Assembly: GCF_006345805.1 (NCBI RefSeq)
Contig: NC_043002.1
Coordinates: forward strand, 70,494,001 to 70,558,000
From: Octopus sinensis
Taxonomy: Eukaryota
Direction: 5' to 3'
DNA length: 64,000 nucleotides
Shown: positions 11,244-64,000 of the stretch, in pieces
How the letters are laid out: each line of letters opens with the position of its first letter
Position numbering within the stretch: position 1 is the stretch's first letter
The notes under the pieces: model-generated
Seen by the model: only the letters and a program-made list of their open reading frames with translations
Databases searched by the model: none
Told to the model about the DNA's origin: nothing
Program-made: the position numbers and the translations under genes

Positions 11244-11343
11244 NNNNNNNNNNNNNNNNNNNNNNNNNNNNNNNNNNNNNNNNNNNNNNNNNNNNNNNNN
11301 NNNNNNNNNNNNNNNNNNNNNNNNNNNNNNNNNNNNNNNNNNN
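11244..11343. other. Assembly gap (100 N)
   Basis: Run of 100 N, probably a placeholder of unknown true length. Confidence 0.99.
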
Positions 11344-28078: not shown

Positions 28079-28329
28079 CTATGTGTGTAAAGAGAATTAA
28101 GATTATGTTGCCATATAGGCGTATAGTTATATAGCATCCGGAAGGGAGACCAGCTGCTGCTGCTGCTGCAACTACCACTATTTATCTTCGTCAACATCAT
28201 CATCTACTTTTTCTTCATTCATCAATATGGATTGGAACTTAAATAGATACGTCAGAAAACACAATTTAAAATTGTTTTTTAGCAGTAAATTTTAAAGATA
28301 GGTATTTCAAAATATTGACAATGTTCGTT

Positions 28330-42113: not shown

Positions 42114-43325
42114 CATACACACACACACATACACACATAATAAAGGTAAAAAATTGAATATTAATTTGATTAATATGAATTGAAAACCAGTAGTGTAGCA
42201 TATAAGACCATAGCGGATCTTCTTATAACAAAATGGATGACTATTGTTAATGGTTCATCCCTGTTATATAATACTTTCACTTTAATAGTGAAAGTGTCTG
42301 CATTACAAAAGAGAGATGTGTTTGTTTCACTTTTAACACGTAATACTGAAATAGTGGAGAAGATATGATATTGCTGTGGGGTTGCCCTAGGGAAAAAGTT
42401 AAGATTTCTTTGCTGATGACACTCCCCGGACCTTAAGTAAGGCATGTATAAAATTTGAATGAAATTGGTTGTGTAGTTCTCAAGTTTAGGGAGAAAACAC
42501 ATACAGACAGGCAGACATTCTCAGTTTTATATATAGAGAGATTAATAAAGGGATGGCCAAATAACTCTATGGCCAAAGACAATCCAACCATGACCATTCA
42601 TTCTTTGCCGCTGAAATGCAGAATATTAGACCTATATTATCCAATGTGCTTTACTCTTTTACAACGGTTAAGTATAATATGAAAGGGGTTTATTTGATAT
42701 TCTGTCATATAAAGGACACACTAAAAAGTTTTCTTGAAGACAGTAAAAAAAATTCTTTTAAGATAATGATTGTCGTAGTTTAAACATATTTAAAATTTTC
42801 TTTATTCTGGCATAATCCCAGGTATCTACTGAATATATAAACCTCTCTCGGATTATTTATGAAAAATTTAATCTTCGATTATCTAAACGTAATCTGAATA
42901 TTTTTATTCTTCATTCTAGAATAAAGCAGGAATGTTTCTATGTAAGACTGTTCGAAAGAAACATTATTCTATTGGAAGATATCCACCTGCGACAATTTAT
43001 AAAATGATTGATGCTTGTCTTGCCATTCACTCAAAGATCGTCTGGGCATGAATTCCAGCTATTGATGTGTTGTGGATTGGTTTTCACATCAGTTGTATAA
43101 AAACGTTTTACATATCACTTGACTTATTATATTCTCCTTATAATACGGATTGTCATACTATACGAGCGCTGTTGTTGCGATTCTAGCCAGAAATTTTCTA
43201 TGTTTCAGTATTTCGGAATCATCATTTTTTTTTTTTTTTTAATCTTAGAAACAACAATCCTAGGTTCTCGTATGCATTCATGTTTGGATGATTTCAGAAA
43301 TAATGGGAAGATTTGAAATAGATAC

Positions 43326-48010: not shown

Positions 48011-48230
48011 TATGCATATATCTATATACGTATAGATGTAAGTATGTACACATACGTTTGTATATATGCATATATATGTATGTATGTATATATATATATA
48101 TATATATGTATGTATATAGATATATACATATATATATGTATGTATATACATATATGCATATATATATGTATATATTTATATGTATATATATGTATAGATG
48201 TATGTATATATACGTATGTATATATATATG

Positions 48231-48263
<33 letters not shown>

Positions 48264-48403
48264 TTGTATATATATGTATGTATATATATATATATGTATA
48301 TACATATATATATACATATATAGCCAGATTGCCATGTTGATTCGTTAGCTTCTGCACGCATTTTTTTCTCTCCTTGTTTCTTTCTGTGTTTCTTTTCTGT
48401 GTA

Positions 48404-48441
48404 TCTTTCTGTTGAAGAGCGTAGGCTCGAAACGTAAAAGA
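48404..48441 (+). ncRNA. Type I hammerhead-ribozyme-like motif (A6U variant)
   Basis: TCTTT-CTGTTGA-A-GAGC-GTAG-GCTC-GAAA-CGT-A-AAAGA: stem I TCTTT/AAAGA, 4-bp stem II, palindromic ACGU stem III, GUA cleavage triplet. Confidence 0.5.
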
Positions 48442-48537
48442 CTTGTTTTATTTATATTCCTGAGAGCCATACTAATACAATTGTTTGTTTATATTCCATC
48501 TGCCTTGGTCTTTTGTTTATTTTCATAAAGCTTCCCG

Positions 48538-49817: not shown

Positions 49818-49955
49818 TATGTATGTATATGTATATATATATATATATGCATATATAACGGGAAGCTTTATGAAAATAGACAAAAGACGAAGGCAGGTGG
49901 AAAACAAACAAACAATTGTATTAGTATGGCGCTCAGGAAATATAAATAAAACAAG

Positions 49956-49993
49956 TCTTTAACGTTTCGAGCCTACGCTCTTCAACAGAAAGA
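49956..49993 (-). ncRNA. Type I hammerhead-ribozyme-like motif (second, inverted copy)
   Basis: Minus strand TCTTTCTGTTGAAGAGCGTAGGCTCGAAACGTTAAAGA (GUU triplet). Confidence 0.45.
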
Positions 49994-50209
49994 TACACAG
50001 AGAGAAAAAAAACACAGAAAGAAGGAGAGAAAAAAAATGCGTGCAGTAACTAACGAATCAACATATGTTTATATATATATATATATGCGTATATATACAT
50101 ATACATATGCATACATATATTTACATATACATAAATATACACGCACACATATATATATTTAACGTATACATATATATACCGTATATTTAATGTATTATTA
50201 TATATAAAT

Positions 50210-50448
50210 ATAGTCTAATAAAGGGACATAAATACCCTCGATAGAAAAAAAAAAGAAGACGTTCCTATTCGCGTGGGAGTCGAACCCATGTCCCTTTATT
50301 AACGCGGCTAAGTGTTACCTATACACCAGTGAAACAGCTTCCCTCTTCCTGTCAATTTTAAGAACTATAATAGTTCGTGATTGTTTTTTTTTTATATGTA
50401 AACAAACTTTCTATATGCTTTGGCTTTTATACCCCTTTATTAGACTAT
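50210..50448. mobile_element. About 240-bp element bounded by 16-bp inverted repeats, containing a tRNA-like Pol III unit
   Basis: ATAGTCTAATAAAGGG (50210-50225) and CCCTTTATTAGACTAT (50433-50448). Confidence 0.55.
50260..50335 (-). pseudogene. tRNA-derived (Val-like 5' end) sequence with A box, B box and downstream T10 terminator; not a foldable tRNA
   Basis: Minus strand GTTTCACTGGTGTATAGGTAACAC... (A box 50318-50328), GGTTCGACTCC (B box 50276-50286), T run at about 50245-50254; acceptor and anticodon stems do not pair. Confidence 0.6.
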
Positions 50449-50476
50449 TTGCCCTAGTTTTTGCACGGTGATCGCA

Positions 50477-50484
50477 TATAAAAA
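50477..50484 (+). promoter_or_regulatory. Candidate TATA box, 30 bp upstream of the first array unit
   Basis: TATAAAAA at 50477; C-A at 50506-50507 is where homology to the repeat unit begins. Confidence 0.5.
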
Positions 50485-50694
50485 GGCTGTGTCGATTAAG
50501 TAACGCAAAAACACGAACCATTTGGTCGGTTGTGTTTTTTTCGGCTCCTGAAAATTCGGTAAAAAAGAACAAAAAGCGTTGTTGTTGTTGTGGAAATTCT
50601 GAACGGCGTTGACGCGGTTTCGCGTTTCGCTCGTTCAGCGCGTTAAACTTTTTTCTGTTTTGGCGGCCGTTTTCGGTCTGTCAGACAGAAGGAA

Positions 50695-51843
50695 ATGGAC
50701 TATGAGTCTCTAACAGACTTGTCCACGACAGATGAGGAACTGGAAAAGGCAATTGCAGTGAAGCTGATGGAGGAAAAGGCTGGAGTTTTCGAGTCTTTAT
50801 CAGACTCGCCTACGTCTGAGAAGGAGCTAGAAATGGCAGCGAGGAATTTGGAAAAGAAGCTGAGTTATACTTATGCCGGTGTAACCAAGAAGGCGGAAGA
50901 GAAAGAGGTCGACTTGGCCAAGCTACCAAGTTACCAGAAACACATGAAAAAGGAAAGCGGTGAGGTGGAACTATCACCGACACCCAGGAGAAAAGAATGG
51001 TATGATAAGAGGACCATTGTTTACAGGGTGTGCGCAAACGAAAGGAAGAGGGTAGAAGTTGTATCCATGGAATGGATAGAGGAAGCCCTGCGAAGAACTG
51101 AGGAGGAAATAAATTTTCTGACTCGAGGATCCAAGTATGGGACCGTAGTTGTGCATTTTAAAAGTGAATCTGCAGCGAGGAAGATGGCGGCGAAGGCGGT
51201 GAAGTCGGAAAAGGTAACACTGTTACCTACGTATTTAAACAGGAGGATTACACGAATAAGGGTGGAGGGAGTGCCACCAAACGTGGAGGCAGAATGGATT
51301 GTGGCGGCTGTGATCAGCGGCCACGAGGACGAAGTAGATATTCTCCATGCCTCGGTTAAGTCCGAGGGCTGGAGAGGCGTAACAGTGGAGCTGAACGTAC
51401 AGGCAGAGACCGAGGTACTGGTGGACCTGACGGAAAGCATCAGACTGGGAGAAGTGATCATGAGAGTGTGGGTGGAGGGCAGGGCTCCACGTTGTTACAA
51501 GTGTGGCCTGAGGGGTCACATAAGAGCCTTCTGCCCTCCCCCAGGGAAAGAAATGGATTCCGAACCAGAGAGAGAGAAGCAGAAACCAGAGGAGAAGGAA
51601 ACAGAGGAAGAGAATACACAGAAATGGAAGGAAGCTGGAAGTAAGAGGAAGAGAAGAATACGTGGAAAAGAAAACAATATGGAACTCCAATCCACCCCAA
51701 AACCACCCACGCCCTCTGAGTCCCACCCTACCCATGCAGACATTGAACCCACCCGCTCCCCCCCAACAAGAAAACAAAAGAAAAAAAAGAATACACACAC
51801 ACAAGAGAATGAAACGATATCAGGATGTACATTTGTACTATGA
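50695..51843 (+). CDS. LINE ORF1-like protein, copy 1 (382 aa; C-terminal module out of frame)
   Basis: RRM-like GTVVVHFKSESAARK and RIRVEGVPPNV; CX2CX4HX4C knuckle CYKCGLRGHIRAFC at 51493-51534; single-base deletions near 51810 and downstream. Confidence 0.75.
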   Translation: MDYESLTDLSTTDEELEKAIAVKLMEEKAGVFESLSDSPTSEKELEMAARNLEKKLSYTYAGVTKKAEEKEVDLAKLPSYQKHMKKESGEVELSPTPRRKEWYDKRTIVYRVCANERKRVEVVSMEWIEEALRRTEEEINFLTRGSKYGTVVVHFKSESAARKMAAKAVKSEKVTLLPTYLNRRITRIRVEGVPPNVEAEWIVAAVISGHEDEVDILHASVKSEGWRGVTVELNVQAETEVLVDLTESIRLGEVIMRVWVEGRAPRCYKCGLRGHIRAFCPPPGKEMDSEPEREKQKPEEKETEEENTQKWKEAGSKRKRRIRGKENNMELQSTPKPPTPSESHPTHADIEPTRSPPTRKQKKKKNTHTQENETISGCTFVL

Positions 51844-52244
51844 CTGAACAGAAAGAAGTTAAAAGTCTAATGGAAGAGTATAAATGGTATGATGTTGGTG
51901 AGACTAGGTATGCTGTGATTGAAAAGAAGAACATAGGTGAGTTTATGGGAGGTGTGAAAGGAAGAATTGGGAGGTGAAAGATATAAGAATGAGCGATGAA
52001 TTCGTGGAAAATATGGATGAGTATTTCGGAGTAAGAATGGATATGGAATTTATTCGTATTGGCAAGAACATTCAAGTGACTATGAAAAACAAAGGACAGG
52101 TAAGTGATGCTGACGGACGGGGCCGTTGGTATCGCTTTCATTTAATCATTTTTTCGTTTAACAATTCATGTTCATAAAATTTAATTGTAATGTTATATGT
52201 CCCCATGTTTCTTAGTGTCCCTTTCTGTGTCGCCCCTAGTGGGT

Positions 52245-52250
52245 AATAAA
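52245..52250 (+). terminator. Polyadenylation signal at the end of unit 1 (present in every complete unit)
   Basis: AATAAA followed by GAAAT and a short A run at each junction. Confidence 0.55.
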
Positions 52251-52445
52251 GAAATAAAAAAACACGAACCATTTGGTCGGTTGTGTTTTTTTCGGCTCCT
52301 GAAAATTCGGTAAAAAAGAACAAAAAGCGGTGTTGTTGTTGTGGAAATTCTGAACGGCGTTGACGCGGTTTCGCGTTTCGCTCGTTCAGCGCGTTAAACT
52401 TTTTTCTGTTTTGGCGGCCGTTTTCGGTCTGTCAGACAGAAGGAA

Positions 52446-53588
52446 ATGGACTATGAGTCTCTAACAGACTTGTCCACGACAGATGAGGAACTGGAACAGG
52501 CAATTGCAGTGAAGCTGATGGAGGAAAAGGCTGGAGTTTTCGAGTCTTTATCAGACTTGTCTGAGAAGGAGCTAGAAATGGCAGCAAGGAAATTGGAAAA
52601 GAAGCTGAGTTATACTTATGCCGGTGTAACCAAGAAGGCGGAAGAGAAAGGGGTCGACTTGGCCAAGCTACCAAGTTACCAGAAACACATGAAAAAGGAA
52701 AGCGGTGAGGTGGAACTATCACCGACACCCAGGAGAAAAGAATGGTATGATAAGAGGACCATTGTTTACAGGGTGTTCGCAAACGAAAGGAAGAGGGTAG
52801 AAGTTGTAACCATGGAATGGATAGAGGAAGCCCTGCGAAGAACTGAGGAGGAAATAAATTTTCTGACTCGAGGATCCAAGTATGGGACCGTAGTTGTGCA
52901 TTTTAAAAGTGAATCTGCAGCGAGGAAGATGGCGGCGAAGGCGGTGAAGTCGGAAAAGGTAACACTGTTACCTACGTATTTAAACAGGAGGATTACACGA
53001 ATAAGGGTGGAGGGAGTGCCACCAAACGTGGAGGCAGAATGGATTGTGGCGGCTGTGATCAGCGGCCACGAGGACGAAGTGGATATTCTCCATGCCTCGG
53101 TTAAGTCCGAGGGCTGGAGAGGCGTAACAGTGGAGCTGAACGTACAGGCAGAGACCGAGGTACTGGTGGACCTGACGGAAAGCATCAGACTGGGAGAAGT
53201 GATCATGAGAGTGTGGGTGGAGGGCAGGGCTCCACGTTGTTACAAGTGTGGCCTGAGGGGTCACATAAGAGCCTTCTGCCCTCCCCCAGGGAAAGAAATG
53301 GATCCCGAACCAGAGAGAGAGAAGCAGAAACCAGAGGAGAAGGAAACAGAGGAAGAGAATACACAGAAATGGAAGGAAGCTGGAAGTAAGAGGAAGAGAA
53401 GAATACGTGGAAAAGAAAATAATATGGAACTCCAATCCACCCCAAAACCACCCACGCCCTCTGAGTCCCACCCTATCCATGCAGACATTGAACCCACCCG
53501 CTCCCCCCCAACAAGAAAACAAAAGAAAAAAAGAATACACACACACAAGAGATTGAAATCGATATCAGGCCGTACATTTGTACTATGA
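52446..53588 (+). CDS. LINE ORF1-like protein, copy 2 (380 aa), with the 89-aa module as a separate overlapping ORF 53585-53854
   Basis: Same motifs; in-frame 6-nt deletion near the N-terminus; 1-nt shorter A run near 53525. Confidence 0.75.
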   Translation: MDYESLTDLSTTDEELEQAIAVKLMEEKAGVFESLSDLSEKELEMAARKLEKKLSYTYAGVTKKAEEKGVDLAKLPSYQKHMKKESGEVELSPTPRRKEWYDKRTIVYRVFANERKRVEVVTMEWIEEALRRTEEEINFLTRGSKYGTVVVHFKSESAARKMAAKAVKSEKVTLLPTYLNRRITRIRVEGVPPNVEAEWIVAAVISGHEDEVDILHASVKSEGWRGVTVELNVQAETEVLVDLTESIRLGEVIMRVWVEGRAPRCYKCGLRGHIRAFCPPPGKEMDPEPEREKQKPEEKETEEENTQKWKEAGSKRKRRIRGKENNMELQSTPKPPTPSESHPIHADIEPTRSPPTRKQKKKRIHTHKRLKSISGRTFVL

Positions 53589-54189
53589 CTGAACAGAAAG
53601 AAGTTAAAAGTCTAATGGAAGAGTATAAATGGTATGATGTTGGTGAGACTAGGTATGCTGTGATTGAAAAGAAGAACATAGGTGACTTTATGGTGATGTG
53701 TGAATGCGAGAATTGGGAGGTGAAAGATATAAGAATGAGCGATGAATTCGTGGAAAATATGGATGAGTATTTCGGAGTAAGAATGGATATGGAATTTGTT
53801 CGTATTGGCAAGGAACATTCAAGTGACTATGAAAAACAAAGGACAGGTAAGTGATGCTGACGGACGGGGCCGTTGGTATCGCTTTCATTTAATCATTTTT
53901 TCGTTTAACAATTCATGTTCATAAAGTTTAATTATAATGTTATATGTCCCCATGTTTCTTAGTGTCCCTTTCTGTGTCGCCCCTAGTGGGTAATAAAGAA
54001 ATAAAAACACGAACCATTTGGTCGGTTGTGTTTTTTTCGGCTCCTGAAAATTCGGTAAAAAAGAACAAAAGCGGTGTTGTTGTTGTGGAAATTCTGAACG
54101 GCGTTGACGCGGTTTCGCGTTTCGCTCGTTCAGCGCGTTAAACTTTTTTCTGTTTTGGCGGCCGTTTTCGGTCTGTCAGACAGAAGGAA

Positions 54190-55605
54190 ATGGACTATGA
54201 GTCTCTAACAGACTTGTCCACGACAGATGAGGAACTGGAACAGGCAATTGCAGTGAAGCTGATGGAGGAAAAGGCTGGAGTTTTCGAGTCTTTATCAGAC
54301 TCGCCTACGTCTGAGAAGGAGCTAGAAATGGCAGCAAGGAAATTGGAAAAGAAGCTGAGTTATACTTATGCCGGTGTAACCAAGAAGGCGGAAGAGAAAG
54401 GGGTCGACTTGGCCAAGCTACCAAGTTACCAGAAACACATGAAAAAGGAAAGCGGTGAGGTGGAACTATCACCGACACCCAGGAGGAAAGAATGGTATGA
54501 TAAGAGGACCATTGTTTACAGGGTGTACGCAAACGAAAGGAAGAGGGTAGAAGTTGTAACCATGGAATGGATAGAGGAAGCCCTGCGAAGAACTGAGGAG
54601 GAAATAAATTTTCTGACTCGAGGATCCAAGTATGGGACCGTAGTTGTGCATTTTAAAAGTGAATCTGCAGCGAGGAAGATGGCGGCGAAGGCGGTGAAGT
54701 CGGAAAAGGTAACACTGTTACCTACGTATTTAAACAGGAGGATTACACGAATAAGGGTGGAGGGAGTGCCACCAAACGTGGAGGCAGAATGGATTGTGGC
54801 GGCTGTGATCAGCGGCCACGAGGACGAAGTGGATATTCTCCATGCCTCGGTTAAGTCCGAGGGCTGGAGAGGCGTAACAGTGGAGCTGAACGTACAGGCA
54901 GAGACCGAGGTACTGGTGGACCTGACGGAAAGCATCAGACTGGGAGAAGTGATCATGAGAGTGTGGGTGGAGGGCAGGGCTCCACGTTGTTACAAGTGTG
55001 GCCTGAGGGGTCACATAAGAGCCTTCTGCCCTCCCCCAGGGAAAGAAATGGATCCCGAACCAGAGAGAGAGAAGCAGAAACCAGAGGAGAAGGAAACAGA
55101 GGAAGAGAATACACAGAAATGGAAGGAAGCTGGAAGTAAGAGGAAGAGAAGAATACGTGGAAAAGAAAATAATATGGAACTCCAATCCACCCCAAAACCA
55201 CCCACGCCCTCTGAGTCCCACCCTATCCATGCAGACATTGAACCCACCCGCTCCCCCCCAACAAGAAAACAAAAGAAAAAAAAGAATACACACACACAAG
55301 AGATTGAAATCGATATCAGGCCGTACATTTGTACTATGACTGAACAGAAAGAAGTTAAAAGTCTAATGGAAGAGTATAAATGGTATGATGTTGGTGAGAC
55401 TAGGTATGCTGTGATTGAAAAGAAGAACATAGGTGACTTTATGGTGATGTGTGAATGCGAGAATTGGGAGGTGAAAGATATAAGAATGAGCGATGAATTC
55501 GTGGAAAATATGGATGAGTATTTCGGAGTAAGAATGGATATGGAATTTGTTCGTATTGGCAAGGAACATTCAAGTGACTATGAAAAACAAAGGACAGGTA
55601 AGTGA
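54190..55605 (+). CDS. LINE ORF1-like protein, copy 3 (471 aa, intact)
   Basis: Uninterrupted frame: acidic N-terminus, RRM-like region, CCHC knuckle, charged/Pro-rich linker, C-terminal module. Confidence 0.85.
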   Translation: MDYESLTDLSTTDEELEQAIAVKLMEEKAGVFESLSDSPTSEKELEMAARKLEKKLSYTYAGVTKKAEEKGVDLAKLPSYQKHMKKESGEVELSPTPRRKEWYDKRTIVYRVYANERKRVEVVTMEWIEEALRRTEEEINFLTRGSKYGTVVVHFKSESAARKMAAKAVKSEKVTLLPTYLNRRITRIRVEGVPPNVEAEWIVAAVISGHEDEVDILHASVKSEGWRGVTVELNVQAETEVLVDLTESIRLGEVIMRVWVEGRAPRCYKCGLRGHIRAFCPPPGKEMDPEPEREKQKPEEKETEEENTQKWKEAGSKRKRRIRGKENNMELQSTPKPPTPSESHPIHADIEPTRSPPTRKQKKKKNTHTQEIEIDIRPYICTMTEQKEVKSLMEEYKWYDVGETRYAVIEKKNIGDFMVMCECENWEVKDIRMSDEFVENMDEYFGVRMDMEFVRIGKEHSSDYEKQRTGK

Positions 55606-55942
55606 TGCTGACGGACGGGGCCGTTGGTATCGCTTTCATTTAATCATTTTTTCGTTTAACAATTCATGTTCATAAAGTTTAATTATAATGTTATATGTCC
55701 CCATGTTTCTTAGTGTCCCTTTCTGTGTCGCCCCTAGTGGGTAATAAAGAAATAAAAAACACGAACCATTTGGTCGGTTGTGTTTTTTTCGGCTCCTGAA
55801 AATTCGGTAAAAAAGAACAAAAAGCGTGGTTGTTGTTGTGGAAATTCTGAACGGCGTTGACGCGGTTTCGCGTTTCGCTCGTTCAGCGCGTTAAACTTTT
55901 TTCTGTTTTGGCGGCCGTTTTCGGTCTGTCAGACAGAAGGAA

Positions 55943-57358
55943 ATGGACTATGAGTCTCTAACAGACTTGTCCACGACAGATGAGGAACTGGAACAGGCAA
56001 TTGCAGTGAAGCTGATGGAGGAAAAGGCTGGAGTTTTCGAGTCTTTATCAGACTCGCCTACGTCTGAGAAGGAGCTAGAAATGGCAGCGAGGAATTTGGA
56101 AAAGAAGCTGAGTTATACTTATGCCGGTGTAACCAAGAAGGCGGAAGAGAAAGGGGTCGACTTGGCCAAGCTACCAAGTTACCAGAAACACATGAAAAAG
56201 GAAAGCGGTGAGGTGGAACTATCACCGACACCCAGGAGAAAAGAATGGTATGATAAGAGGACCATTGTTTACAGGGTGTTCGCAAACGAAAGGAAGAGGG
56301 TAGAAGTTGTAACCATGGAATGGATAGAGGAAGCCCTGCGAAGAACTGAGGAGGAAATAAATTTTCTGACTCGAGGATCCAAGTATGGGACCGTAGTTGT
56401 GCATTTTAAAAGTGAATCTGCAGCGAGGAAGATGGCGGCGAAGGCGGTGAAGTCGGAAAAGGTAACACTGTTACCTACGTATTTAAACAGGAGGATTACA
56501 CGAATAAGGGTGGAGGGAGTGCCACCAAACGTGGAGGCAGAATGGATTGTGGCGGCTGTGATCAGCGGCCACGAGGACGAAGTAGATATTCTCCATGCCT
56601 CGGTTAAGTCCGAGGGCTGGAGAGGCGTAACAGTGGAGCTGAACGTACAGGCAGAGACCGAGGTACTGGTGGACCTGACGGAAAGCATCAGACTGGGAGA
56701 AGTGATCATGAGAGTGTGGGTGGAGGGCAGGGCTCCACGTTGTTACAAGTGTGGCCTGAGGGGTCACATAAGAGCCTTCTGCCCTCCCCCAGGGAAAGAA
56801 ATGGATCCCGAACCAGAGAGAGAGAAGCAGAAACCAGAGGAGAAGGAAACAGAGGAAGAGAATACACAGAAATGGAAGGAAGCTGGAAGTAAGAGGAAGA
56901 GAAGAATACGTGGAAAAGAAAATAATATGGAACTCCAATCCACCCCAAAACCACCCACGCCCTCTGAGTCCCACCCTATCCATGCAGACATTGAACCCAC
57001 CCGCTCCCCCCCAACAAGAAAACAAAAGAAAAAAAAGAATACACACACACAAGAGATTGAAATCGATATCAGGCCGTACATTTGTACTATGACTGAACAG
57101 AAAGAAGTTAAAAGTCTAATGGAAGAGTATAAATGGTATGATGTTGGTGAGACTAGGTATGCTGTGATTGAAAAGAAGAACATAGGTGACTTTATGGTGA
57201 TGTGTGAATGCGAGAATTGGGAGGTGAAAGATATAAGAATGAGCGATGAATTCGTGGAAAATATGGATGAGTATTTCGGAGTAAGAATGGATATGGAATT
57301 TGTTCGTATTGGCAAGGAACATTCAAGTGACTATGAAAAACAAAGGACAGGTAAGTGA
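55943..57358 (+). CDS. LINE ORF1-like protein, copy 4 (471 aa, intact)
   Basis: Same organisation as copy 3. Confidence 0.85.
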   Translation: MDYESLTDLSTTDEELEQAIAVKLMEEKAGVFESLSDSPTSEKELEMAARNLEKKLSYTYAGVTKKAEEKGVDLAKLPSYQKHMKKESGEVELSPTPRRKEWYDKRTIVYRVFANERKRVEVVTMEWIEEALRRTEEEINFLTRGSKYGTVVVHFKSESAARKMAAKAVKSEKVTLLPTYLNRRITRIRVEGVPPNVEAEWIVAAVISGHEDEVDILHASVKSEGWRGVTVELNVQAETEVLVDLTESIRLGEVIMRVWVEGRAPRCYKCGLRGHIRAFCPPPGKEMDPEPEREKQKPEEKETEEENTQKWKEAGSKRKRRIRGKENNMELQSTPKPPTPSESHPIHADIEPTRSPPTRKQKKKKNTHTQEIEIDIRPYICTMTEQKEVKSLMEEYKWYDVGETRYAVIEKKNIGDFMVMCECENWEVKDIRMSDEFVENMDEYFGVRMDMEFVRIGKEHSSDYEKQRTGK

Positions 57359-57698
57359 TGCTGACGGACGGGGCCGTTGGTATCGCTTTCATTTAATCAT
57401 TTTTTCGTTTAACAATTCATGTTCATAAAGTTTAATTATAATGTTATATGTCCCCATGTTTCTTAGTGTCCCTTTCTGTGTCGCCCCTAGTGGGTAATAA
57501 AGAAATAAAAAAACACGAACCGTTTGACGTCGGTTGTGTTTTTTTCGGCTCCTGAAAATTCGGTAAAAAAGAACAAAAAGCGTGGTTGTTGTTGTGGAAA
57601 TTCTGAACGGCGTTGACGCGGTTTCGCGTTTCGCTCGTTCAGCGCGTTAAACTTTTTTCTGTTTTGGCGGCCGTTTTCGGTCTGTCAGACAGAAGGAA

Positions 57699-59113
57699 AT
57701 GGACTATGAGTCTCTAACAGACTTGTCCACGACAGATGAGGAACTGGAACAGGCAATTGCAGTGAAGCTGATGGAGGAAAAGGCTGGAGTTTTCGAGTCT
57801 TTATCAGACTCGCCTACGTCTGAGAAGGAGCTAGAAATGGCAGCGAGGAATTTGGAAAAGAAGCTGAGTTATACTTATGCCGGTGTAACCAAGAAGGCGG
57901 AAGAGAAAGGGGTCGACTTGGCCAAGCTACCAAGTTACCAGAAACACATGAAAAAGGAAAGCGGTGAGGTGGAACTATCACCGACACCCAGGAGAAAAGA
58001 ATGGTATGATAAGAGGACCATTGTTTACAGGGTGTGCGCAAACGAAAGGAAGAGGGTAGAAGTTGTATCCATGGAATGGATAGAGGAAGCCCTGCGAAGA
58101 ACTGAGGAGGAAATAAATTTTCTGACTCGAGGATCCAAGTACGGGACCGTAGTTGTGCATTTAAAAGTGAATCTGCAGCGAGGAAGATGGCAGCGAAGGC
58201 GGTGAAGTCGGAAAAGGTAACACTGTTACCTACGTATTTAAACAGGAGGATTACACGAATAAGGGTGGAGGGAGTGCCACCAAACGTGGAGGCAGAATGG
58301 ATTGTGGCGGCTGTGATCAGCGGCCACGAGGACGAAGTGGATATTCTCCATGCCTCGGTTAAGTCCGAGGGCTGGAGAGGCGTAACAGTGGAGCTGAACG
58401 TACAGGCAGAGACCGAGGTACTGGTGGACCTGACGGAAAGCATCAGACTGGGAGAAGTGATCATGAGAGTGTGGGTGGAGGGCAGGGCTCCACGTTGTTA
58501 CAAGTGTGGCCTGAGGGGTCACATAAGAGCCTTCTGCCCTCCCCCAGGGAAAGAAATGGATCCCGAACCAGAGAGAGAGAAGCAGAAACCAGAGGAGAAG
58601 GAAACAGAGGAAGAGAATACACAGAAATGGAAGGAAGCTGGAAGTAAGAGGAAGAGAAGAATACGTGGAAAAGAAAATAATATGGAACTCCAATCCACCC
58701 CAAAACCACCCACGCCCTCTGAGTCCCACCCTATCCATGCAGACATTGAACCCACCCGCTCCCCCCCAACAAGAAAACAAAAGAAAAAAAAGAATACACA
58801 CACACAAGAGATTGAAATCGATATCAGGCCGTACATTTGTACTATGACTGAACAGAAAGAAGTTAAAAGTCTAATGGAAGAGTATAAATGGTATGATGTT
58901 GGTGAGACTAGGTATGCTGTGATTGAAAAGAAGAACATAGGTGACTTTATGGTGATGTGTGAATGCGAGAATTGGGAGGTGAAAGATATAAGAATGAGCG
59001 ATGAATTCGTGGAAAATATGGATGAGTATTTCGGAGTAAGAATGGATATGGAATTTGTTCGTATTGGCAAGGAACATTCAAGTGACTATGAAAAACAAAG
59101 GACAGGTAAGTGA
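57699..59113 (+). pseudogene. LINE ORF1-like, copy 5, frameshifted (1-nt deletion in a T run at about 58160)
   Basis: CATTTAAAAG versus CATTTTAAAAG in other copies; splits into 168-aa and 308-aa ORFs; could be a sequencing error. Confidence 0.75.
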
Positions 59114-59450
59114 TGCTGACGGACGGGGCCGTTGGTATCGCTTTCATTTAATCATTTTTTCGTTTAACAATTCATGTTCATAAAGTTTAATTATAATGTT
59201 ATATGTCCCCATGTTTCTTAGTGTCCCTTTCTGTGTCGCCCCTAGTGGGTAATAAAGAAATAAAAAACACGAACCATTTGGTCGGTTGTGTTTTTTTCGG
59301 CTGCTGAAAATTCGGTAAAAAAGAAGAAAAAGCGTTGTTGTTGTTGTGGAAATTCTGAACGGCGTTGACGCGGTTTCGCGTTTCGCTCGTTCGGCGCGTT
59401 AAACTTTTTTCTGTTTTGGCGGCCGTTTTCGGTCTGTCAGACAGAAGGAA

Positions 59451-60866
59451 ATGGACTATGAGTCTCTAACAGACTTATCCACGACAGATGAGGAACTGGA
59501 ACAGGCAATTGCAATGAAGCTGATGGAAGAAAAGGCTGGAGTTTTCGAGTCTTTATCAGACTCGCCTACGTCTGAGAAGGAGCTAGAAATGGCAGCGAGG
59601 AATTTGGAAAAGAAGCTGAGTTATACTTATGCCGGTGTAACCAAGAAGGCGGAAGAGAAAGGGGTCGACTTGGCCAAGCTACCAAGTTACCAGAAACACA
59701 TGAAAAAGGAAAGCGGTGAGGTGGAACTATCACCGACACCCAGGAGAAAAGAATGGTATGATAAGAGGACCATTGTTTACAGGGTGTGCGCAAACGAAAG
59801 GAAGAGGGTAGAAGTTGTATCCATGGAATGGATAGAGGAAGCCCTGCGAAGAACTGAGGAGGAAATAAATTTTCTGACTCGAGGATCCAAGTACGGGACC
59901 GTAGTTGTGCACTTTAAAAGTGAATCTGCAGCGAGGAAGATGGCAGCGAAGGCGGTGAAGTCGGAAAAGGTAACACTGTTACCTACGTATTTAAACAGGA
60001 GGATTACACGAATAAGGGTGGAGGGAGTGCCACCAAACGTGGAGGCAGAATGGATTGTGGCGGCTGTGATCAGCGGCCACGAGGACGAAGTGGATATTCT
60101 CCATGCCTCGGTTAAGTCCGAGGGCTGGAGAGGCGTAACAGTGGAGCTGAACGTACAGGCAGAGACCGAGGTACTGGTGGACCTGACGGAAAGCATCAGA
60201 CTGGGAGAAGTGATCATGAGAGTGTGGGTGGAGGGCAGGGCTCCACGTTGTTACAAGTGTGGCCTGAGGGGTCACATAAGAGCCTTCTGCCCTCCCCCAG
60301 GGAAAGAAATGGATTCCGAACCAGAGAGAGAGAAGCAGAAACCAGAGGAGAAGGAAACAGAGGAAGAGAATACACAGAAATGGAAGGAAGCTGGAAGTAA
60401 GAGGAAGAGAAGAATACGTGGAAAAGAAAATAATATGGAACTCCAATCCACCCCAAAACCACCCACGCCCTCTGAGTCCCACCCTATCCATGCAGACATT
60501 GAACCCACCCGCTCCCCCCCAACAAGAAAACAAAAGAAAAAAAAGAATACACACACACAAGAGATTGAAAACGATATCAGGATGTACATTTGTACTATGA
60601 CTGAACAGAAAGAAGTTAAAAGTCTAATGGAAGAGTATAAATGGTATGATGTTGGTGAGACTAGGTATGCTGTGATTGAAAAGAAGAACATAGGTGAGTT
60701 TATGGGGAGGTGTGAAAGGAAGAATTGGGAGGTGAAAGATATAAGAATGAGCGATGAATTCGTGGAAAATATGGATGAGTATTTCGGAGTAAGAATGGAT
60801 ATGGAATTTATTCGTATTGGCAAAGAACATTCAAGTGACTATGAAAAACAAAGGACAGGTAAGTGA
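59451..60866 (+). CDS. LINE ORF1-like protein, copy 6 (471 aa, intact)
   Basis: Same organisation as copy 3, with the variant GEFMGRCERKNW block. Confidence 0.85.
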   Translation: MDYESLTDLSTTDEELEQAIAMKLMEEKAGVFESLSDSPTSEKELEMAARNLEKKLSYTYAGVTKKAEEKGVDLAKLPSYQKHMKKESGEVELSPTPRRKEWYDKRTIVYRVCANERKRVEVVSMEWIEEALRRTEEEINFLTRGSKYGTVVVHFKSESAARKMAAKAVKSEKVTLLPTYLNRRITRIRVEGVPPNVEAEWIVAAVISGHEDEVDILHASVKSEGWRGVTVELNVQAETEVLVDLTESIRLGEVIMRVWVEGRAPRCYKCGLRGHIRAFCPPPGKEMDSEPEREKQKPEEKETEEENTQKWKEAGSKRKRRIRGKENNMELQSTPKPPTPSESHPIHADIEPTRSPPTRKQKKKKNTHTQEIENDIRMYICTMTEQKEVKSLMEEYKWYDVGETRYAVIEKKNIGEFMGRCERKNWEVKDIRMSDEFVENMDEYFGVRMDMEFIRIGKEHSSDYEKQRTGK

Positions 60867-61201
60867 TGCTGACGGACGGGGCCGTTGGTATCGCTTTCAT
60901 TTAATCATTTTTTCGTTTAACAATTCATGTTCATAAAGTTTAATTATAATGTTATATGTCCCCATGTTTCTTGGTGTCCCTTTCTGTGTCGCCCCTAGTG
61001 GGTAATAAAGAAATAAAAAACACGAACCATTTGGTCGGTTGTGTTTTTTTCGGCTGCTGAAAATTCGGTAAAAAAGAAAAAAGCGTTGTTGTTGTTGTGG
61101 AAATTCTGAACGGCGTTGACGCGGTTTCGCGTTTCGCTCGTTCAGCGCGTTAAACTTTCTTCTGTTTTGGCGGCCGTTTTCGGTCTGTCAGACAGAAGGA
61201 A

Positions 61202-62350
61202 ATGGACTATGAGTCTCTAACAGACTTATCCACGACAGATGAGGAACTGGAACAGGCAATTGCAATGAAGCTGATGGAAGAAAAGGCTGGAGTTTTCGAG
61301 TCTTTATCAGACTCGCCTACGTCTGAGAAGGAGCTAGAAATGGCAGCGAGGAATTTGGAAGAGAAGCTGAGTTATACCTATGCCGGTGTAACCAAGAAGG
61401 CGGAAGAGAAAGGGGTCGACATGGCCAAGTTGCCAAGTTACCAGAAATACATGAAAAAGGAAAGCGGTGAGGTGGAACTATCACCGACACCCAGGAGAAA
61501 GGAATGGTATGATAAGAGGACCATTATTTACAGGGTGTTCGCAAACGAAAGGAAGAGGGTAGAAGTTGTAACCATGGAATGGATAGAGGAAGCCCTGCGA
61601 AGAACTGAGGAGGAAATAAACTTTCTGACTCGAGGATCCAAGTACGGTACCGTAGTTGTGCATTTCAAAACTGAGTCTGCAGCGAGGAAGATGGCGGCGA
61701 AGGCGGTGAAGTCGGAAAAGGTAACACTGTTACCTACGTATTTAAACAGGAGGATTACACGAATAAGGGTGGAGGGAGTGCCACCAAACGTGGAGGCAGA
61801 ATGGATTGTGGCGGCTGTGATCAGCGGCCACGAGGACGAAGTGGATATTCTCCATGCCTCGGTTAAGTCCGAGGGCTGGAGAGGCGTAACAGTGGAGCTG
61901 AACGTACAGGCAGAGACCGAGGTACTGGTGGACCTGACGGAAAGCATCAGACTAGGAAACGTGATTATGAGAGTGTGGGTGGAGGGCAGGGCTCCACGTT
62001 GTTACAAGTGTGGCCTGAGGGGTCACATAAGAGCCTTCTGCCCTCCCCCAGGGAAAGAAATGGATTCCGAACCAGAGAGAGAGAAGCAGAAACCAGAGGA
62101 GAAGGAAACAGAAGAAGAGAATACACAGAAATGGAAGGAAGCTGGAAGTAAGAGGAAGAGAAGAATACGTGGAAAAGAAAATAATATGGAACTCCAATCC
62201 ACCCCAAAACCACCCACGCCCTCTGAGTCCCACCCTATCCATGCAGACATTGAACCCACCCGCTCCCCCCCAACAAGAAAACAAAGAAAAAAAAGAATAC
62301 ACACACACAAGAGATTGAAATCGATATCAGGCCGTACATTTGTACTATGA
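61202..62350 (+). CDS. LINE ORF1-like protein, copy 7 (382 aa), with the 89-aa module as overlapping ORF 62347-62616
   Basis: Most divergent copy; 1-nt deletion in the A run near 62285. Confidence 0.75.
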   Translation: MDYESLTDLSTTDEELEQAIAMKLMEEKAGVFESLSDSPTSEKELEMAARNLEEKLSYTYAGVTKKAEEKGVDMAKLPSYQKYMKKESGEVELSPTPRRKEWYDKRTIIYRVFANERKRVEVVTMEWIEEALRRTEEEINFLTRGSKYGTVVVHFKTESAARKMAAKAVKSEKVTLLPTYLNRRITRIRVEGVPPNVEAEWIVAAVISGHEDEVDILHASVKSEGWRGVTVELNVQAETEVLVDLTESIRLGNVIMRVWVEGRAPRCYKCGLRGHIRAFCPPPGKEMDSEPEREKQKPEEKETEEENTQKWKEAGSKRKRRIRGKENNMELQSTPKPPTPSESHPIHADIEPTRSPPTRKQRKKRIHTHKRLKSISGRTFVL

Positions 62351-62952
62351 CTGAACAGAAAGAAGTTAAAAGTCTAATGGAAGAGTATAAATGGTATGAT
62401 GTTGGTGAGACTAGGTATGCTGTGATTGAAAAGAAGAACATAGGTGAGTTTATGGGGAGGTGTGAAAGGAAGAATTGGGAGGTGAAAGATATAAGAATGA
62501 GCGATGAATTCGTGGAAAATATGGATGAGTATTTCGGAGTAAGAATGGATATGGAATTTATTCGTATTGGCAAAGAACATTCAAGTGACTATGAAAAACA
62601 AAGGACAGGTAAGTGATGCTGACGGACGGGGCCGTTGGTATCGCTTTCATTTTATCATTTTTTCGTTTAACAATTCATTTTCATAAAGTTTAATTATAAT
62701 GTTCTATGTCCCCATGTCTTTTGGTGTCCCCTTCTGTGTCGCCCCTAGTGGGTAATAAAGAAATCAAAAACACGAACCATTTGGTCGGTTGTGTTTTTTT
62801 ACGCTCGTAAAATTCGGTAAAAAAGAACAAAAAGCGTTGTTGTTGTTGTGGAAATTCTGAACGGCGTTGACGCGGTTTCGCGTTTCGCTCGTTCAGCGCG
62901 TTAAACTTTTTTCTGTTTTGGCGGCCGTTTTCGGTCTGTCAGACAGAAGGAA

Positions 62953-64000
62953 ATGGACTATGAGTCTCTAACAGACTTGTCCACGACAGATGAGGAACTG
63001 GAACAGGCAATTGCAATGAAGCTGATGGAAGAAAAGCCTGGAGTTTTCGAGTCTTTATCAGACTTGTCTACGTCTGAGAGGGAGCTAGAAATGGCAGCAA
63101 GGAAATTGGAAGAGAAGCTGAGTTATACCTATGCCGGTGTAACCAAGAAGGCGGAAGAGAAAGGGGTCGACTTGGCCAAGCTACCAAGTTACCAGAAACA
63201 CATGAAAAAGGAAAGCGGTGAGGTGGAACTATCACCGACACCCAGGAGAAAAGAATGGTATGATAAGAGGACCATTGTTTACAGGGTGTTCGCAAACGAA
63301 AGGAAGAGGGTAGAAGTTGTAACCATGGAATGGATAGAGGAAGCCCTGCGAAGAACTGAGGAGGAAATAAATTTTCTGACTCGAGGATCCAAGTATGGGA
63401 CCGTAGTTGTGCACTTTAAAAGTGAATCTGCAGCGAGGAAGATGGCAGCGAAGGCGGTGAAGTCGGAAAAGGTAACACTGTTACCTACGTATTTAAACAG
63501 GAGGATTACACGAATAAGGGTGGAGGGAGTGCCACCAAACGTGGAGGCAGAATGGATTGTGGCGGCTGTGATCAGCGGCCACGAGGACGAAGTGGATATT
63601 CTCCATGCCTCGGTTAAGTCCGAGGGCTGGAGAGGCGTAACAGTGGAGCTGAACGTACAGGCAGAGACCGAGGTACTGGTGGACCTGACGGAAAGCATCA
63701 GACTGGGAGAAGTGATCATGAGAGTGTGGGTGGAGGGCAGGGCTCCACGTTGTTACAAGTGTGGCCTGAGGGGTCACATAAGAGCCTTCTGCCCTCCCCC
63801 AGGGAAAGAAATGGATCCCGAACCAGAGAGAGAGAAGCAGAAACCAGAGGAGAAGGAAACAGAGGAAGAGAATACACAGAAATGGAAGGAAGCTGGAAGT
63901 AAGAGGAAGAGAAGAATACGTGGAAAAGAAAATAATATGGAACTCCAATCCACCCCAAAACCACCCACGCCCTCTGAGTCCCACCCTATCCATGCAGACA
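62953..64000 (+). CDS. LINE ORF1-like protein, copy 8 (partial, runs off the window end)
   Basis: ATGGACTATGAG at 62953; open through the CCHC knuckle. Confidence 0.8.
   Translation, partial: MDYESLTDLSTTDEELEQAIAMKLMEEKPGVFESLSDLSTSERELEMAARKLEEKLSYTYAGVTKKAEEKGVDLAKLPSYQKHMKKESGEVELSPTPRRKEWYDKRTIVYRVFANERKRVEVVTMEWIEEALRRTEEEINFLTRGSKYGTVVVHFKSESAARKMAAKAVKSEKVTLLPTYLNRRITRIRVEGVPPNVEAEWIVAAVISGHEDEVDILHASVKSEGWRGVTVELNVQAETEVLVDLTESIRLGEVIMRVWVEGRAPRCYKCGLRGHIRAFCPPPGKEMDPEPEREKQKPEEKETEEENTQKWKEAGSKRKRRIRGKENNMELQSTPKPPTPSESHPIHAD

What the first reader, a model, noticed from the sequence alone, without database searches (positions are those of the whole stretch)
50477..52263. The repeat unit coincides with a predicted transcript: TATA at -30, start at the unit boundary, end at AATAAA
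Seen: homology between the unique left flank and the repeat begins at C-A 50506-50507, exactly 30 bp after TATAAAAA (50477). Each complete unit ends AATAAAGAAAT and is fused to the next unit's AAAAACACG. Junction A runs are only 5-7 nt and no TATA lies at -30 of internal units. Inference: the unit boundaries were set by an RNA (start site to polyadenylation site), for example through RT template jumping or a circular cDNA/RNA intermediate, and the array was then expanded at DNA level. Only the first copy would keep the external promoter, while the rest need read-through or an internal promoter.
Basis: partly seen in the sequence, partly recalled or inferred. Interest (0 to 1): 0.7.

Follow-up and report, generated by a model that had tools for sequence, protein, structure and literature searches.

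The report
Octopus gag-only LINE element in tandem

Summary
The array starts at 50507, 30 nt after TATAAAAA (50477). It has seven full units of about 1750 bp and an eighth cut by the window end. Units are joined as ...AATAAAGAAAT + A5-7 + CACGAACC.

The unit is a complete non-autonomous non-LTR retrotransposon of Octopus. It has a CpG-rich 5' UTR and one 471-aa ORF with two RRM-like domains and a CCHC knuckle. That ORF is homologous to ORF1 of neighbouring autonomous LINEs. The unit ends in a roughly 45-nt 3' module, ...GCCCCTAGTGGGTAATAAAGAAAT. An autonomous endonuclease/reverse-transcriptase (EN/RT) LINE and a tRNA-SINE carry the same module.

Solitary 5'-truncated copies in O. vulgaris have 14-16-bp target-site duplications directly after this tail, with no poly(A). 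So AATAAA belongs to the LINE tail.

Five of the seven O. vulgaris loci fetched also hold head-to-tail arrays, some mixing different family members. Arrays therefore appear to be seeded by retrotransposition-type end-to-end joining. Mosaic shared variants point to later DNA-level exchange.

The TATA flank is unique to this locus. The family's 5' end is the same elsewhere without it. No transcript data could be obtained.

Verdict: a new member of known kinds (ORF1-only LINE derivatives; TE-derived tandem arrays). Interest is modest.

The parts
50477..50484 (+). TATAAAAA in the unique left flank, 30 nt before the first unit
   Evidence: Chance about 0.006 (TATAAA) to 0.04 (TATAWA) per position. 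The flank 50200-50506 has no copy in seven other loci.
50507..64000 (+). Head-to-tail array of the 1.75-kb element: seven full units and an eighth cut by the window end
   Evidence: Units are 96.9-99.3% identical over the first 1230 alignment columns; there are 90 variable columns over the whole unit, 34 of them shared between units.
50507..52255 (+). Unit 1, complete at its 5' end; the ORF is split (382 aa + fragments)
52256..54002 (+). Unit 2; the ORF is split by a 1-nt loss in an A run (380 aa + 89 aa)
54003..55753 (+). Unit 3, the reference unit with an intact ORF
54003..54189 (+). 5' UTR of unit 3; CpG-rich (18 CpG, observed/expected 1.98), a candidate internal promoter
   Evidence: ORF 0.63, window background 0.81. 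The promoter role is inferred.
54190..55605 (+). ORF of 471 aa, a LINE ORF1 homologue. Also intact in units 4 (from 55943) and 6 (from 59451)
   Evidence: BLASTP to the ORF1 of an EN/RT LINE gives E=5e-30 and to element B gives E=2e-39. dN/dS is 0.3-0.5 between loci.
54397..54975 (+). Two tandem RRM-like domains (residues about 70-262)
   Evidence: AlphaFold2 pLDDT is 88-97 over this core. Foldseek top PDB matches are tandem-RRM proteins, E=4e-5.
54985..55032 (+). CCHC zinc knuckle, RCYKCGLRGHIRAFCP
55595..55605 (+). CAG|GTAAGT splice-donor-like site, with the ORF stop (TGA) two codons into it; present in every unit
   Evidence: Twenty-two O. vulgaris gene models match the last ~88 codons (most over nearly their whole length); those whose sequences were read splice here to unrelated exons.
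55709..55753 (+). Conserved 3' module ...GTCCCTTTCTGTGTCGCCCCTAGTGGGTAATAAAGAAAT, which contains the AATAAA
   Evidence: Shared with elements B and D, the autonomous LINE-P, deleted LINE-P copies and a tRNA-SINE.
52245..52269 (+). Example junction: AATAAAGAAAT + A7 + CACGAAC. The others begin at 53992, 55743, 57496, 59251, 61004 and 62754
55754..57506 (+). Unit 4, intact ORF
57507..59261 (+). Unit 5, ORF broken at codon 168
59262..61014 (+). Unit 6, intact ORF
61015..62764 (+). Unit 7, the most diverged unit (96.9-97.9%); ORF split
62765..64000 (+). Unit 8, cut by the window end

Best explanation
The repeat unit is one full-length copy of a non-autonomous, ORF1-only non-LTR (LINE-type) retrotransposon of Octopus.

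Shown:
- It encodes a gag-like ORF1 protein with two RRM-like domains, a CCHC knuckle and a C-terminal part of unknown fold. It has no endonuclease or reverse transcriptase.
- It carries the same roughly 45-nt 3' module as an autonomous EN/RT LINE.
- The right boundary of the unit is the LINE tail, and AATAAA lies inside it.

Inferred:
- The partner LINE's reverse transcriptase probably starts copying at that module by target-primed reverse transcription.
- The left boundary is the 5' end of the element's RNA.
- The array was seeded when complete copies were joined tail-to-head with only a few extra bases. This happened either by repeated insertion at the tail of a resident copy or by the reverse transcriptase jumping from the 5' end of one RNA to the 3' end of another.
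- Unequal exchange and gene conversion at the DNA level then enlarged and reshuffled the array.
- The TATA box in the flank is not part of the element and did not define its start. At most it may now help transcribe unit 1.
- The other units would rely on the CpG-rich 5' UTR as an internal promoter, or on read-through.
For: ORF1 identity:
- BLASTP to the ORF1 lying directly upstream of an EN (PF03372) and RT (PF00078) ORF2 in L001 gives E=5e-30.
- There are 359 homologues in the representative library.
- The AlphaFold2 core has pLDDT 88-97 and matches tandem-RRM proteins. The CCHC knuckle is seen.
- No EN or RT is present in the unit.

Shared tail:
- ...GCCCCT(T/A)GTGGGTAATAA... ends the window unit, elements B and D, a nearly intact LINE-P (EN PF03372; RT PF00078 at E=1e-30; best PDB match L1 ORF2p at E=1e-42) and a tRNA-SINE.

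Insertion by target-primed reverse transcription:
- Solitary copies truncated at unit positions 817 and 1645 have 14-16-bp target-site duplications directly after ...AATAAAGAATCA.
- SINE copies have 14-15-bp duplications directly after their tails (AATAAAGAAAT in L001; AATAAAGAATTAA in L007).

RNA-defined 5' end:
- CACGAACC in the window, CACGTG and AACGTG in L001, CACATG in L004, CAACGAA in L007 and AACATT in LINE-P each follow a tail with 0-6 filler bases.

Head-to-tail joining is a habit of the family:
- Arrays or dimers occur in L001, L002, L004, L005 and L007.
- Heterologous joins occur: LINE-P to U, U to B, B to deleted LINE-P, and U to D.
- One tail-to-internal join occurs in L004 at 3134.

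Lineage under protein constraint: dN/dS is 0.3-0.5.

DNA-level exchange:
- 34 of 90 variable columns are shared by subsets of units, for example U6/U7/U8, U2/U3 and U4/U5.
- U1 shares a 3' block with U6/U7.
- Published frame for TE tandems followed by unequal exchange: PMC5932611.
Against: - No transcript or 5'-end data could be obtained, so the RNA ends are inferred from DNA only.
- The direct autonomous parent was not found. LINE-P shares only about 34% ORF1 protein identity and the last 27-45 nt with the unit.
- The first unit carries the same A5 run as the internal junctions. A DNA-level duplication between flanking A runs explains this at least as simply as RNA-level joining.
- The test for clustering of shared variants in neighbouring units is only suggestive (P=0.07).
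- TATAAA exactly at -30 has a nominal chance of only about 0.006, so calling it incidental is a judgement.
- Loci were found through annotated gene models, which may favour arrays.
Confidence: 0.72

Rival explanations
1. This locus is a source gene. The flanking TATA box sets the transcription start at 50507, the RNA ends at the AATAAA site, and a reverse transcriptase concatenated that RNA (by template jumping or a circular intermediate) to found the array here.
For: TATAAAAA lies exactly 30 nt upstream of the first base shared with the internal units, with nominal chance 0.006-0.04. The junctions carry only short A runs.
Against: - The same element, with the same 5' terminus to within a few bases, occurs on at least 12 O. 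vulgaris chromosomes and in other arrays with unrelated upstream sequence.
- The flank is unique to this locus.
- The end at AATAAAGAAAT is a family-wide LINE tail with no poly(A).
- A cDNA multimer would have to return to its own source locus.
Confidence: 0.08
2. Purely DNA-level origin. One ordinary full-length insertion, flanked on both sides by a short A run (a short target-site duplication, or a tail A run and a target A run), was duplicated by slippage or unequal exchange between those A runs and then expanded. No RNA-level concatenation was involved.
For: - The first unit is preceded by A5, the same spacer as at the internal junctions.
- Shared and mosaic variants among units.
- A published model places a target-site duplication in TE tandem junctions (PMC5932611).
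Against: - Target-site duplications in this family are 14-17 bp, or much longer, not 5 bp.
- Tail-to-head joins between different family members, and a tail-to-internal join, cannot come from duplicating one copy.
- Several loci show distinct junction types.
Confidence: 0.17
3. The array is an assembly artefact: a collapsed or over-expanded repeat, or a chimeric join.
For: Frameshifts fall in homopolymer runs, which may be sequencing errors. The window contains one 100-N gap, at 11244-11343.
Against: The units differ at 90 columns in a structured way. Similar arrays occur at five loci of an independent chromosome-level O. vulgaris assembly. No gap lies in or next to the array.
Confidence: 0.03

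Closest known systems
ORF1-present 'bipartite' non-autonomous LINEs: HeT-A (Jockey clade), HAL1 (L1 clade), Ag-Sponge (CR1 clade), as listed in PMC5786205
   Same: It keeps a 5' UTR, an ORF1 and the LINE 3' end. It lacks EN and RT. Its ORF1 is under purifying selection (dN/dS 0.3-0.5). It coexists with an autonomous LINE that carries the same tail.
   Different: The direct autonomous parent was not identified, and the LINE clade was not determined. The ORF has an extra C-terminal part of about 90 aa that ends at a splice-donor-like site.
Drosophila telomeric HeT-A/TART/TAHRE arrays
   Same: A gag-only element and its autonomous relatives lie head-to-tail in mixed arrays, some with 5'-shortened members (L001, L004, L007).
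   Different: The seven O. vulgaris loci lie 5 to 135 Mb inside chromosome records, not at their ends. There is no evidence for a promoter in the upstream unit's 3' end. The spacing from the tail to GGTCG is not conserved.
TE-derived tandem arrays formed by double insertion and then unequal exchange, for example the R1 array on the D. melanogaster X chromosome (PMC5932611)
   Same: Complete non-LTR elements lie in tandem. There are tail-to-internal joins and distinct 5' truncations, followed by DNA-level expansion.
   Different: The window junctions hold no recognisable flank-derived target-site duplication, only A5-7. The insertion preference appears to be for tails of the family itself rather than for a host gene site.
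LINE ORF1 proteins built of RRM domains plus CCHC knuckles ('type I' in the Khazina and Weichenrieder 2009 scheme; recalled from memory, not checked here)
   Same: A predicted tandem RRM-like core followed by one CCHC knuckle.
   Different: No Pfam family covers the core. Only one knuckle is present. There is an additional C-terminal part.

Membership tests
ORF1-only (bipartite, ORF1-present) non-autonomous LINE | The ORF is homologous to ORF1 of an autonomous EN/RT LINE | tested here: met
   BLASTP E=5e-30 to the ORF1 upstream of EN/RT in L001. tblastn shows 34% identity to LINE-P ORF1.
ORF1-only (bipartite, ORF1-present) non-autonomous LINE | No endonuclease or reverse transcriptase in the element | tested here: met
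   There is one long ORF per unit and Pfam finds only a weak CCHC match. The only ORF2-derived tblastn hit in the window's left 50.5 kb is an EN-like fragment at 28328-29082, outside the array; the array itself was not in that search, so absence of EN/RT in the units rests.
ORF1-only (bipartite, ORF1-present) non-autonomous LINE | The 3' end is shared with an autonomous LINE | tested here: met
   The roughly 45-nt module is aligned in A1. LINE-P has EN, RT and zf-RVT domains. The last 27 nt are 93% identical.
ORF1-only (bipartite, ORF1-present) non-autonomous LINE | Dispersed 5'-truncated copies with target-site duplications | tested here: met
   L006 holds copies starting at unit positions 817 and 1645, with duplications of 14-16 bp.
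ORF1-only (bipartite, ORF1-present) non-autonomous LINE | Derived from a known autonomous element by internal deletion (5' part also shared) | tested here: inconclusive
   There is no DNA-level similarity to LINE-P outside the tail. The parent was not found among seven loci.
ORF1-only (bipartite, ORF1-present) non-autonomous LINE | Mobilised in trans by the partner's ORF2 protein | not testable with these tools
   This needs a retrotransposition assay.
HeT-A/TART-type telomeric retrotransposon array | Located at chromosome ends | tested here: not met
   The O. vulgaris loci lie at 13.9 of 41 Mb, 32.3 of 119 Mb, 135.1 of 182 Mb, 37.7 and 65.4 of 85 Mb, 38.9 of 148 Mb and 5.0 of 129 Mb. The position of the window itself is unknown.
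HeT-A/TART-type telomeric retrotransposon array | Mixed head-to-tail arrays of a gag-only element with autonomous relatives | tested here: met
   On the L001 minus strand: U, then deleted LINE-P, then LINE-P, then U. On the plus strand: U, U, U, B, then deleted LINE-P.
HeT-A/TART-type telomeric retrotransposon array | A promoter in the 3' end of the upstream element drives the downstream one | not testable with these tools
   TAATAAA lies at -12 of each unit. The spacing from the tail to GGTCG is about 31 nt in the window, 38 in L001 and 42 in L007, so it is not conserved.
TE tandem formed by double insertion plus unequal exchange (R1-array type) | A copy of the target-site duplication sits between tandem units | tested here: inconclusive
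   In the window only A5-7 lies between tail and head. L001 has an identical 17-mer after three tails, but this could equally be a tail extension plus the 5' end.
TE tandem formed by double insertion plus unequal exchange (R1-array type) | Tail-to-internal joins or different 5' truncations within arrays | tested here: met
   L004 3134: tail plus AGAAATAGAA joined to unit position 1471. The first unit of L007 is truncated at about 130-143.
TE tandem formed by double insertion plus unequal exchange (R1-array type) | Later DNA-level exchange among units | tested here: met
   There are 34 shared variable columns, and a mosaic in which U1 shares a block with U6/U7. The adjacency permutation test gives P=0.07, so support is moderate.
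LTR retrotransposon or LTR-internal-LTR array | Terminal direct repeats (LTRs) within or around a unit | tested here: not met
   No direct repeat longer than 28 nt and no inverted repeat is present in the unit. The solitary copy in L003 has no LTRs.
Pol II gene with a TATA promoter that defines the unit start | TATA box 25-35 nt upstream of the start | tested here: met
   50477-50484, at -30 of 50507.
Pol II gene with a TATA promoter that defines the unit start | The promoter is associated with the element at other loci | tested here: not met
   The flank is unique. Other left boundaries have unrelated sequence. The TATAAAG in L002 and L005 lies in one shared segment.
Pol II gene with a TATA promoter that defines the unit start | Mapped transcription start at the boundary | not testable with these tools
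   No transcript contigs could be reached; the window's ORFs are not on record.

The most novel reading that the evidence does not exclude
The family may have a built-in array-building way of integrating. Its reverse transcriptase would preferentially prime on the tails of resident family members, or jump end-to-end between RNAs. It would then lay down mixed head-to-tail arrays of gag-only and autonomous elements at internal chromosomal sites, as HeT-A and TART do at Drosophila telomeres but without telomeres. Neighbouring units, or chance flanking TATA boxes, might supply the promoter.
Probability: 0.15. Interest if true: 0.55.

Novelty: new member of a known kind. Interest (0 to 1): 0.3.

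Why it matters
- It turns an apparently odd 'transcript-shaped' satellite into an identified mobile element with a named partner LINE and SINE. That helps repeat annotation of octopus genomes.
- The element is a source of misleading gene models. Twenty-two O. vulgaris predicted proteins match the element's last 88 codons; those read start with them and splice to unrelated exons.
- It offers a natural series for studying how non-LTR elements turn into tandem arrays. The series runs from solitary copies through dimers, 3-unit arrays and mixed arrays to arrays of nine or more units.

Tried and rejected
- Exact-protein look-ups of the window's 471-aa and 89-aa ORFs found nothing on record. No transcript contigs and no view beyond the window's right end could be obtained.
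- Pfam gave no family for the ORF core. The PDB sequence profile matched only the CCHC knuckle.
- The first protein search returned only proteins matching the C-terminal 89 aa. The exhaustive representative search was needed to find ORF1 relatives.
- ARAGORN found no tRNA in the window, although the flank holds a tRNA-like piece.
- A consensus fold of the shared tails gave only a 3-bp hairpin with one compensatory change. That is too weak to claim a recognition stem-loop.
- I first took the TATAAAG about 28 nt upstream of the L002 array as a second, independent flanking TATA. L005 showed it lies in a roughly 65-nt segment shared by paralogous loci and duplicated on both sides of a unit, so I rejected it as independent evidence.
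- I considered the tail's TAATAAAG as a TATA for the next unit, about 31 nt before GGTCGG in the window. The spacing is 38-42 nt in L001 and L007, and the motif is absent in L004, so this is left as a low-probability idea.
- LTR, TIR and Penelope-like readings were rejected. There are no terminal repeats, and the partner has an APE-type endonuclease.
- The 'truncated' copy in L001 at 8338 may be an internal deletion that keeps the first six bases, not a 5' truncation. I did not use it as evidence.
Full report
**Observation**

TATAAAAA occupies 50477-50484. The unique flank ends ...TAAGTAACGC at 50506, and the first repeat unit begins AAAAACACGAACC at 50507.

Units start at 50507, 52256, 54003, 55754, 57507, 59262, 61015 and 62765. 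They are 1747-1755 bp long and 96.9-99.3% identical over the first 1230 alignment columns, the part present in all eight units. The eighth is cut by the window end, so the right end of the array cannot be seen.

Each junction is AATAAAGAAAT, then A5-7 (once CA5), then CACGAACC. Internal units have no TATAWA at -30. They have only the tail's own TAATAAA at -12.

In the left 50.5 kb of this AT-rich window, a position has TATAAA starting at -27..-33 with a frequency of about 0.006. For the looser TATAWA the frequency is about 0.04.

**What the unit is**

The unit has three parts:
- a 187-nt 5' UTR with CpG observed/expected of 1.98, against 0.63 in the ORF and 0.81 in the window background;
- one ORF of 471 aa, intact in units 3, 4 and 6 and broken elsewhere (by 1-nt losses in A runs in units 2 and 7);
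- a 148-nt 3' UTR.

Pfam sees only a weak CCHC knuckle. The organism is an Octopus: every close protein hit is from O. vulgaris or O. sinensis.

The exhaustive search found 359 relatives of the ORF core. An AlphaFold2 model built on 29 of them is confident over residues 70-285 (pLDDT 88-97). Its best matches among solved structures are tandem-RRM proteins, the top one IMP3 RRM12 at E=4e-5.

In locus L001 of O. vulgaris, a homologous ORF (BLASTP E=5e-30) lies directly upstream of an ORF2 with an endonuclease domain (PF03372) and a reverse transcriptase domain (PF00078). The window ORF is therefore a LINE ORF1. The unit itself has no EN or RT.

**The 3' boundary**

The last roughly 45 nt of the unit are ...GTCCCTTTCTGTGTCGCCCCTAGTGGGTAATAAAGAAAT. 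The same module ends several other elements:
- a second ORF1-only element, B, whose ORF1 is 37% identical;
- a 75%-identical relative, D;
- a nearly intact 5.2-kb autonomous LINE, here called LINE-P, with ORF1, EN, RT and zf-RVT domains, whose best solved relative is human L1 ORF2p at E=1e-42;
- internally deleted LINE-P copies;
- a tRNA-derived SINE.

The SINE copy in L001 has a perfect 15-bp target-site duplication directly after ...AATAAAGAAAT. Two solitary 5'-truncated copies of the unit in L006, starting at unit positions 817 and 1645, have 14-16-bp duplications directly after ...AATAAAGAATCA.

So the AATAAA is part of a family-wide LINE tail, and genomic copies carry no poly(A). The genomic 3' end looks set by where the partner's reverse transcriptase starts copying. 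The hexamer AGAAAT at the tail is present one to three times in different copies.

**The 5' boundary**

At independent tail-to-head junctions with different upstream partners, the downstream element begins within a few bases of the same point:
- CACGAACC in the window;
- CACGTG and AACGTG in L001;
- CACATG in L004;
- CAACGAA in L007;
- AACATT in LINE-P.

Between tail and head lie 0-6 filler bases. The left boundary of the unit is thus the family's RNA 5' end, give or take the A run.

**The TATA box**

The flank 50200-50506 has no relative in seven other loci. It contains a MITE-like element with 23-nt inverted ends, and the TATA box lies between that element and the array.

Target-site duplications in the family are about 15 bp, so a motif at -30 is outside the duplication and has no obvious link to integration.

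L002 also has a TATAAAG 28 nt before its first unit. L005 shows this motif lies in a roughly 65-nt segment within a 545-bp left arm shared by L002 and L005, and the segment is duplicated on both sides of a unit in L005. It is not an independent second case.

I conclude that the window's TATA did not define the unit. Whether it now drives unit 1 is untested.

**How arrays form**

Head-to-tail arrangement is typical of this family. Five of the seven O. vulgaris loci show it:
- L002: at least 10 units.
- L004: at least 9 units.
- L007: 3 units. The first is 5'-truncated, and the whole array is bounded by a 101-nt duplication of the SINE it sits in.
- L005: a U-to-D dimer.
- L001: two diverging mixed arrays, containing LINE-P to U, U to B, and B to deleted LINE-P joins.

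Joins between different family members, and a tail-to-internal join (L004 at 3134), cannot arise from duplicating one copy. They point to retrotransposition-type joining. This could be repeated target-primed insertion at resident tails or end-to-end template jumping, and I could not separate the two.

Units and D copies are more alike between loci (95-99%) than the arms that flank them (82-92%). That suggests recurrent insertion or conversion at paralogous sites.

Within the window, 34 of 90 variable columns are shared by subsets of units, and U1 shares a 3' block with U6/U7. This fits DNA-level exchange, although the test for clustering in neighbouring units gives only P=0.07.

The sequence of tandem seed followed by unequal exchange is the published frame for TE-derived arrays (PMC5932611).

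**A serious rival for this locus**

A single insertion flanked by A runs, duplicated between those runs, would also explain why unit 1 carries the same A5 run as the internal junctions. The right end of the array would decide between the two.

**Comparison with known systems**

ORF1-only LINE derivatives are known: HeT-A, HAL1 and Ag-Sponge (PMC5786205). Tandem arrays of non-LTR elements are also known: the R1 array and the Drosophila telomeric arrays.

This element fits both kinds. It differs from HeT-A in that the seven O. vulgaris loci are internal to their chromosomes. The ORF evolves under constraint, with dN/dS 0.3-0.5, as expected if the lineage spreads through active copies.

I did not determine the LINE clade or find the direct autonomous parent.

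**Verdict**

This is a new member of known kinds, of modest interest.

Noticed in passing
window 52097-52107 and the same site in every unit (53844, 55595, 57348, 59103, 60856, 62606): CAG|GTAAGT, a strong splice-donor-like site, lies two codons before the ORF stop. Twenty-two predicted O. vulgaris proteins on at least 12 chromosomes match the last 88 codons (MTEQ...EKQRT); those whose sequences were read use them as a first exon spliced here to unrelated downstream exons. This is either real exonisation or a recurrent annotation artefact.
   Followed up: partly
window 50210-50448: A MITE-like element with 23-nt inverted ends (50210-50232 and 50426-50448). It contains a tRNA T-arm-like piece, but ARAGORN calls no tRNA. 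It lies just left of the TATA box.
   Followed up: partly
window 48177-48535 and 49861-50212: An inverted pair of roughly 360-nt segments, 83% identical, flanked by TA-rich microsatellites.
   Followed up: no
window 28328-29082 (-): A fragment resembling a LINE apurinic-type endonuclease, 29-34% identical to the L001 LINE endonuclease. It is a different LINE remnant.
   Followed up: no
window 11244-11343: A run of 100 N, which is an assembly gap.
   Followed up: no
window 37178-37800: An A/T-rich satellite with periods of 35, 23 and 11 nt, about 17 copies.
   Followed up: no
L005 8620-8690 and 10421-10487; L002 5178-5236: A roughly 65-nt segment carrying TATAAAG lies 28 nt before GGTCGCG, the 5' start of U and D there. 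In L005 it is present on both sides of one unit, like a very long target-site duplication. The left arm (545 bp) is shared by L002 and L005, and the right arm (about 500 bp, a LINE-P-like ORF1 start) by L002, L004 and L005, at 82-92% identity, while the embedded units are 95-99% identical.
   Followed up: partly
L007 5181-5282 and 10424-10524: A 3-unit array sits inside a tRNA-SINE, with about 101 nt of SINE sequence duplicated on both sides (92% identical). The SINE itself has a 14-bp target-site duplication, ATATATAAACCATT.
   Followed up: partly
L001 8321-8337, 8657-8673, 10408-10424: The identical 17-mer AGAAATCTACCCACGTG follows three successive tails and precedes three different downstream elements (expected by chance 0.03). 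It could be a target-site duplication, a 3' transduced tag, or a tail repeat plus the conserved 5' start; this was not resolved.
   Followed up: partly
L001 12331-13065 and 8338-8656: These derivatives keep only the first 6-25 nt and the 3' part of their parent element (a deleted LINE-P and a deleted U). This suggests internal template switching or deletion flush with the 5' end.
   Followed up: no
window 54190-55605, residues 383-471: The C-terminal 'MTEQ' part of the ORF has no Pfam or PDB relative, is predicted with low confidence, and shows dN/dS of 0.84 against 0.3-0.4 for the rest of the ORF.
   Followed up: partly
window 42262-42550 (-) and L005 8153-8446: Another dispersed repeat, 82% identical between the two places. 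It forms part of the left arm of the composite loci.
   Followed up: no
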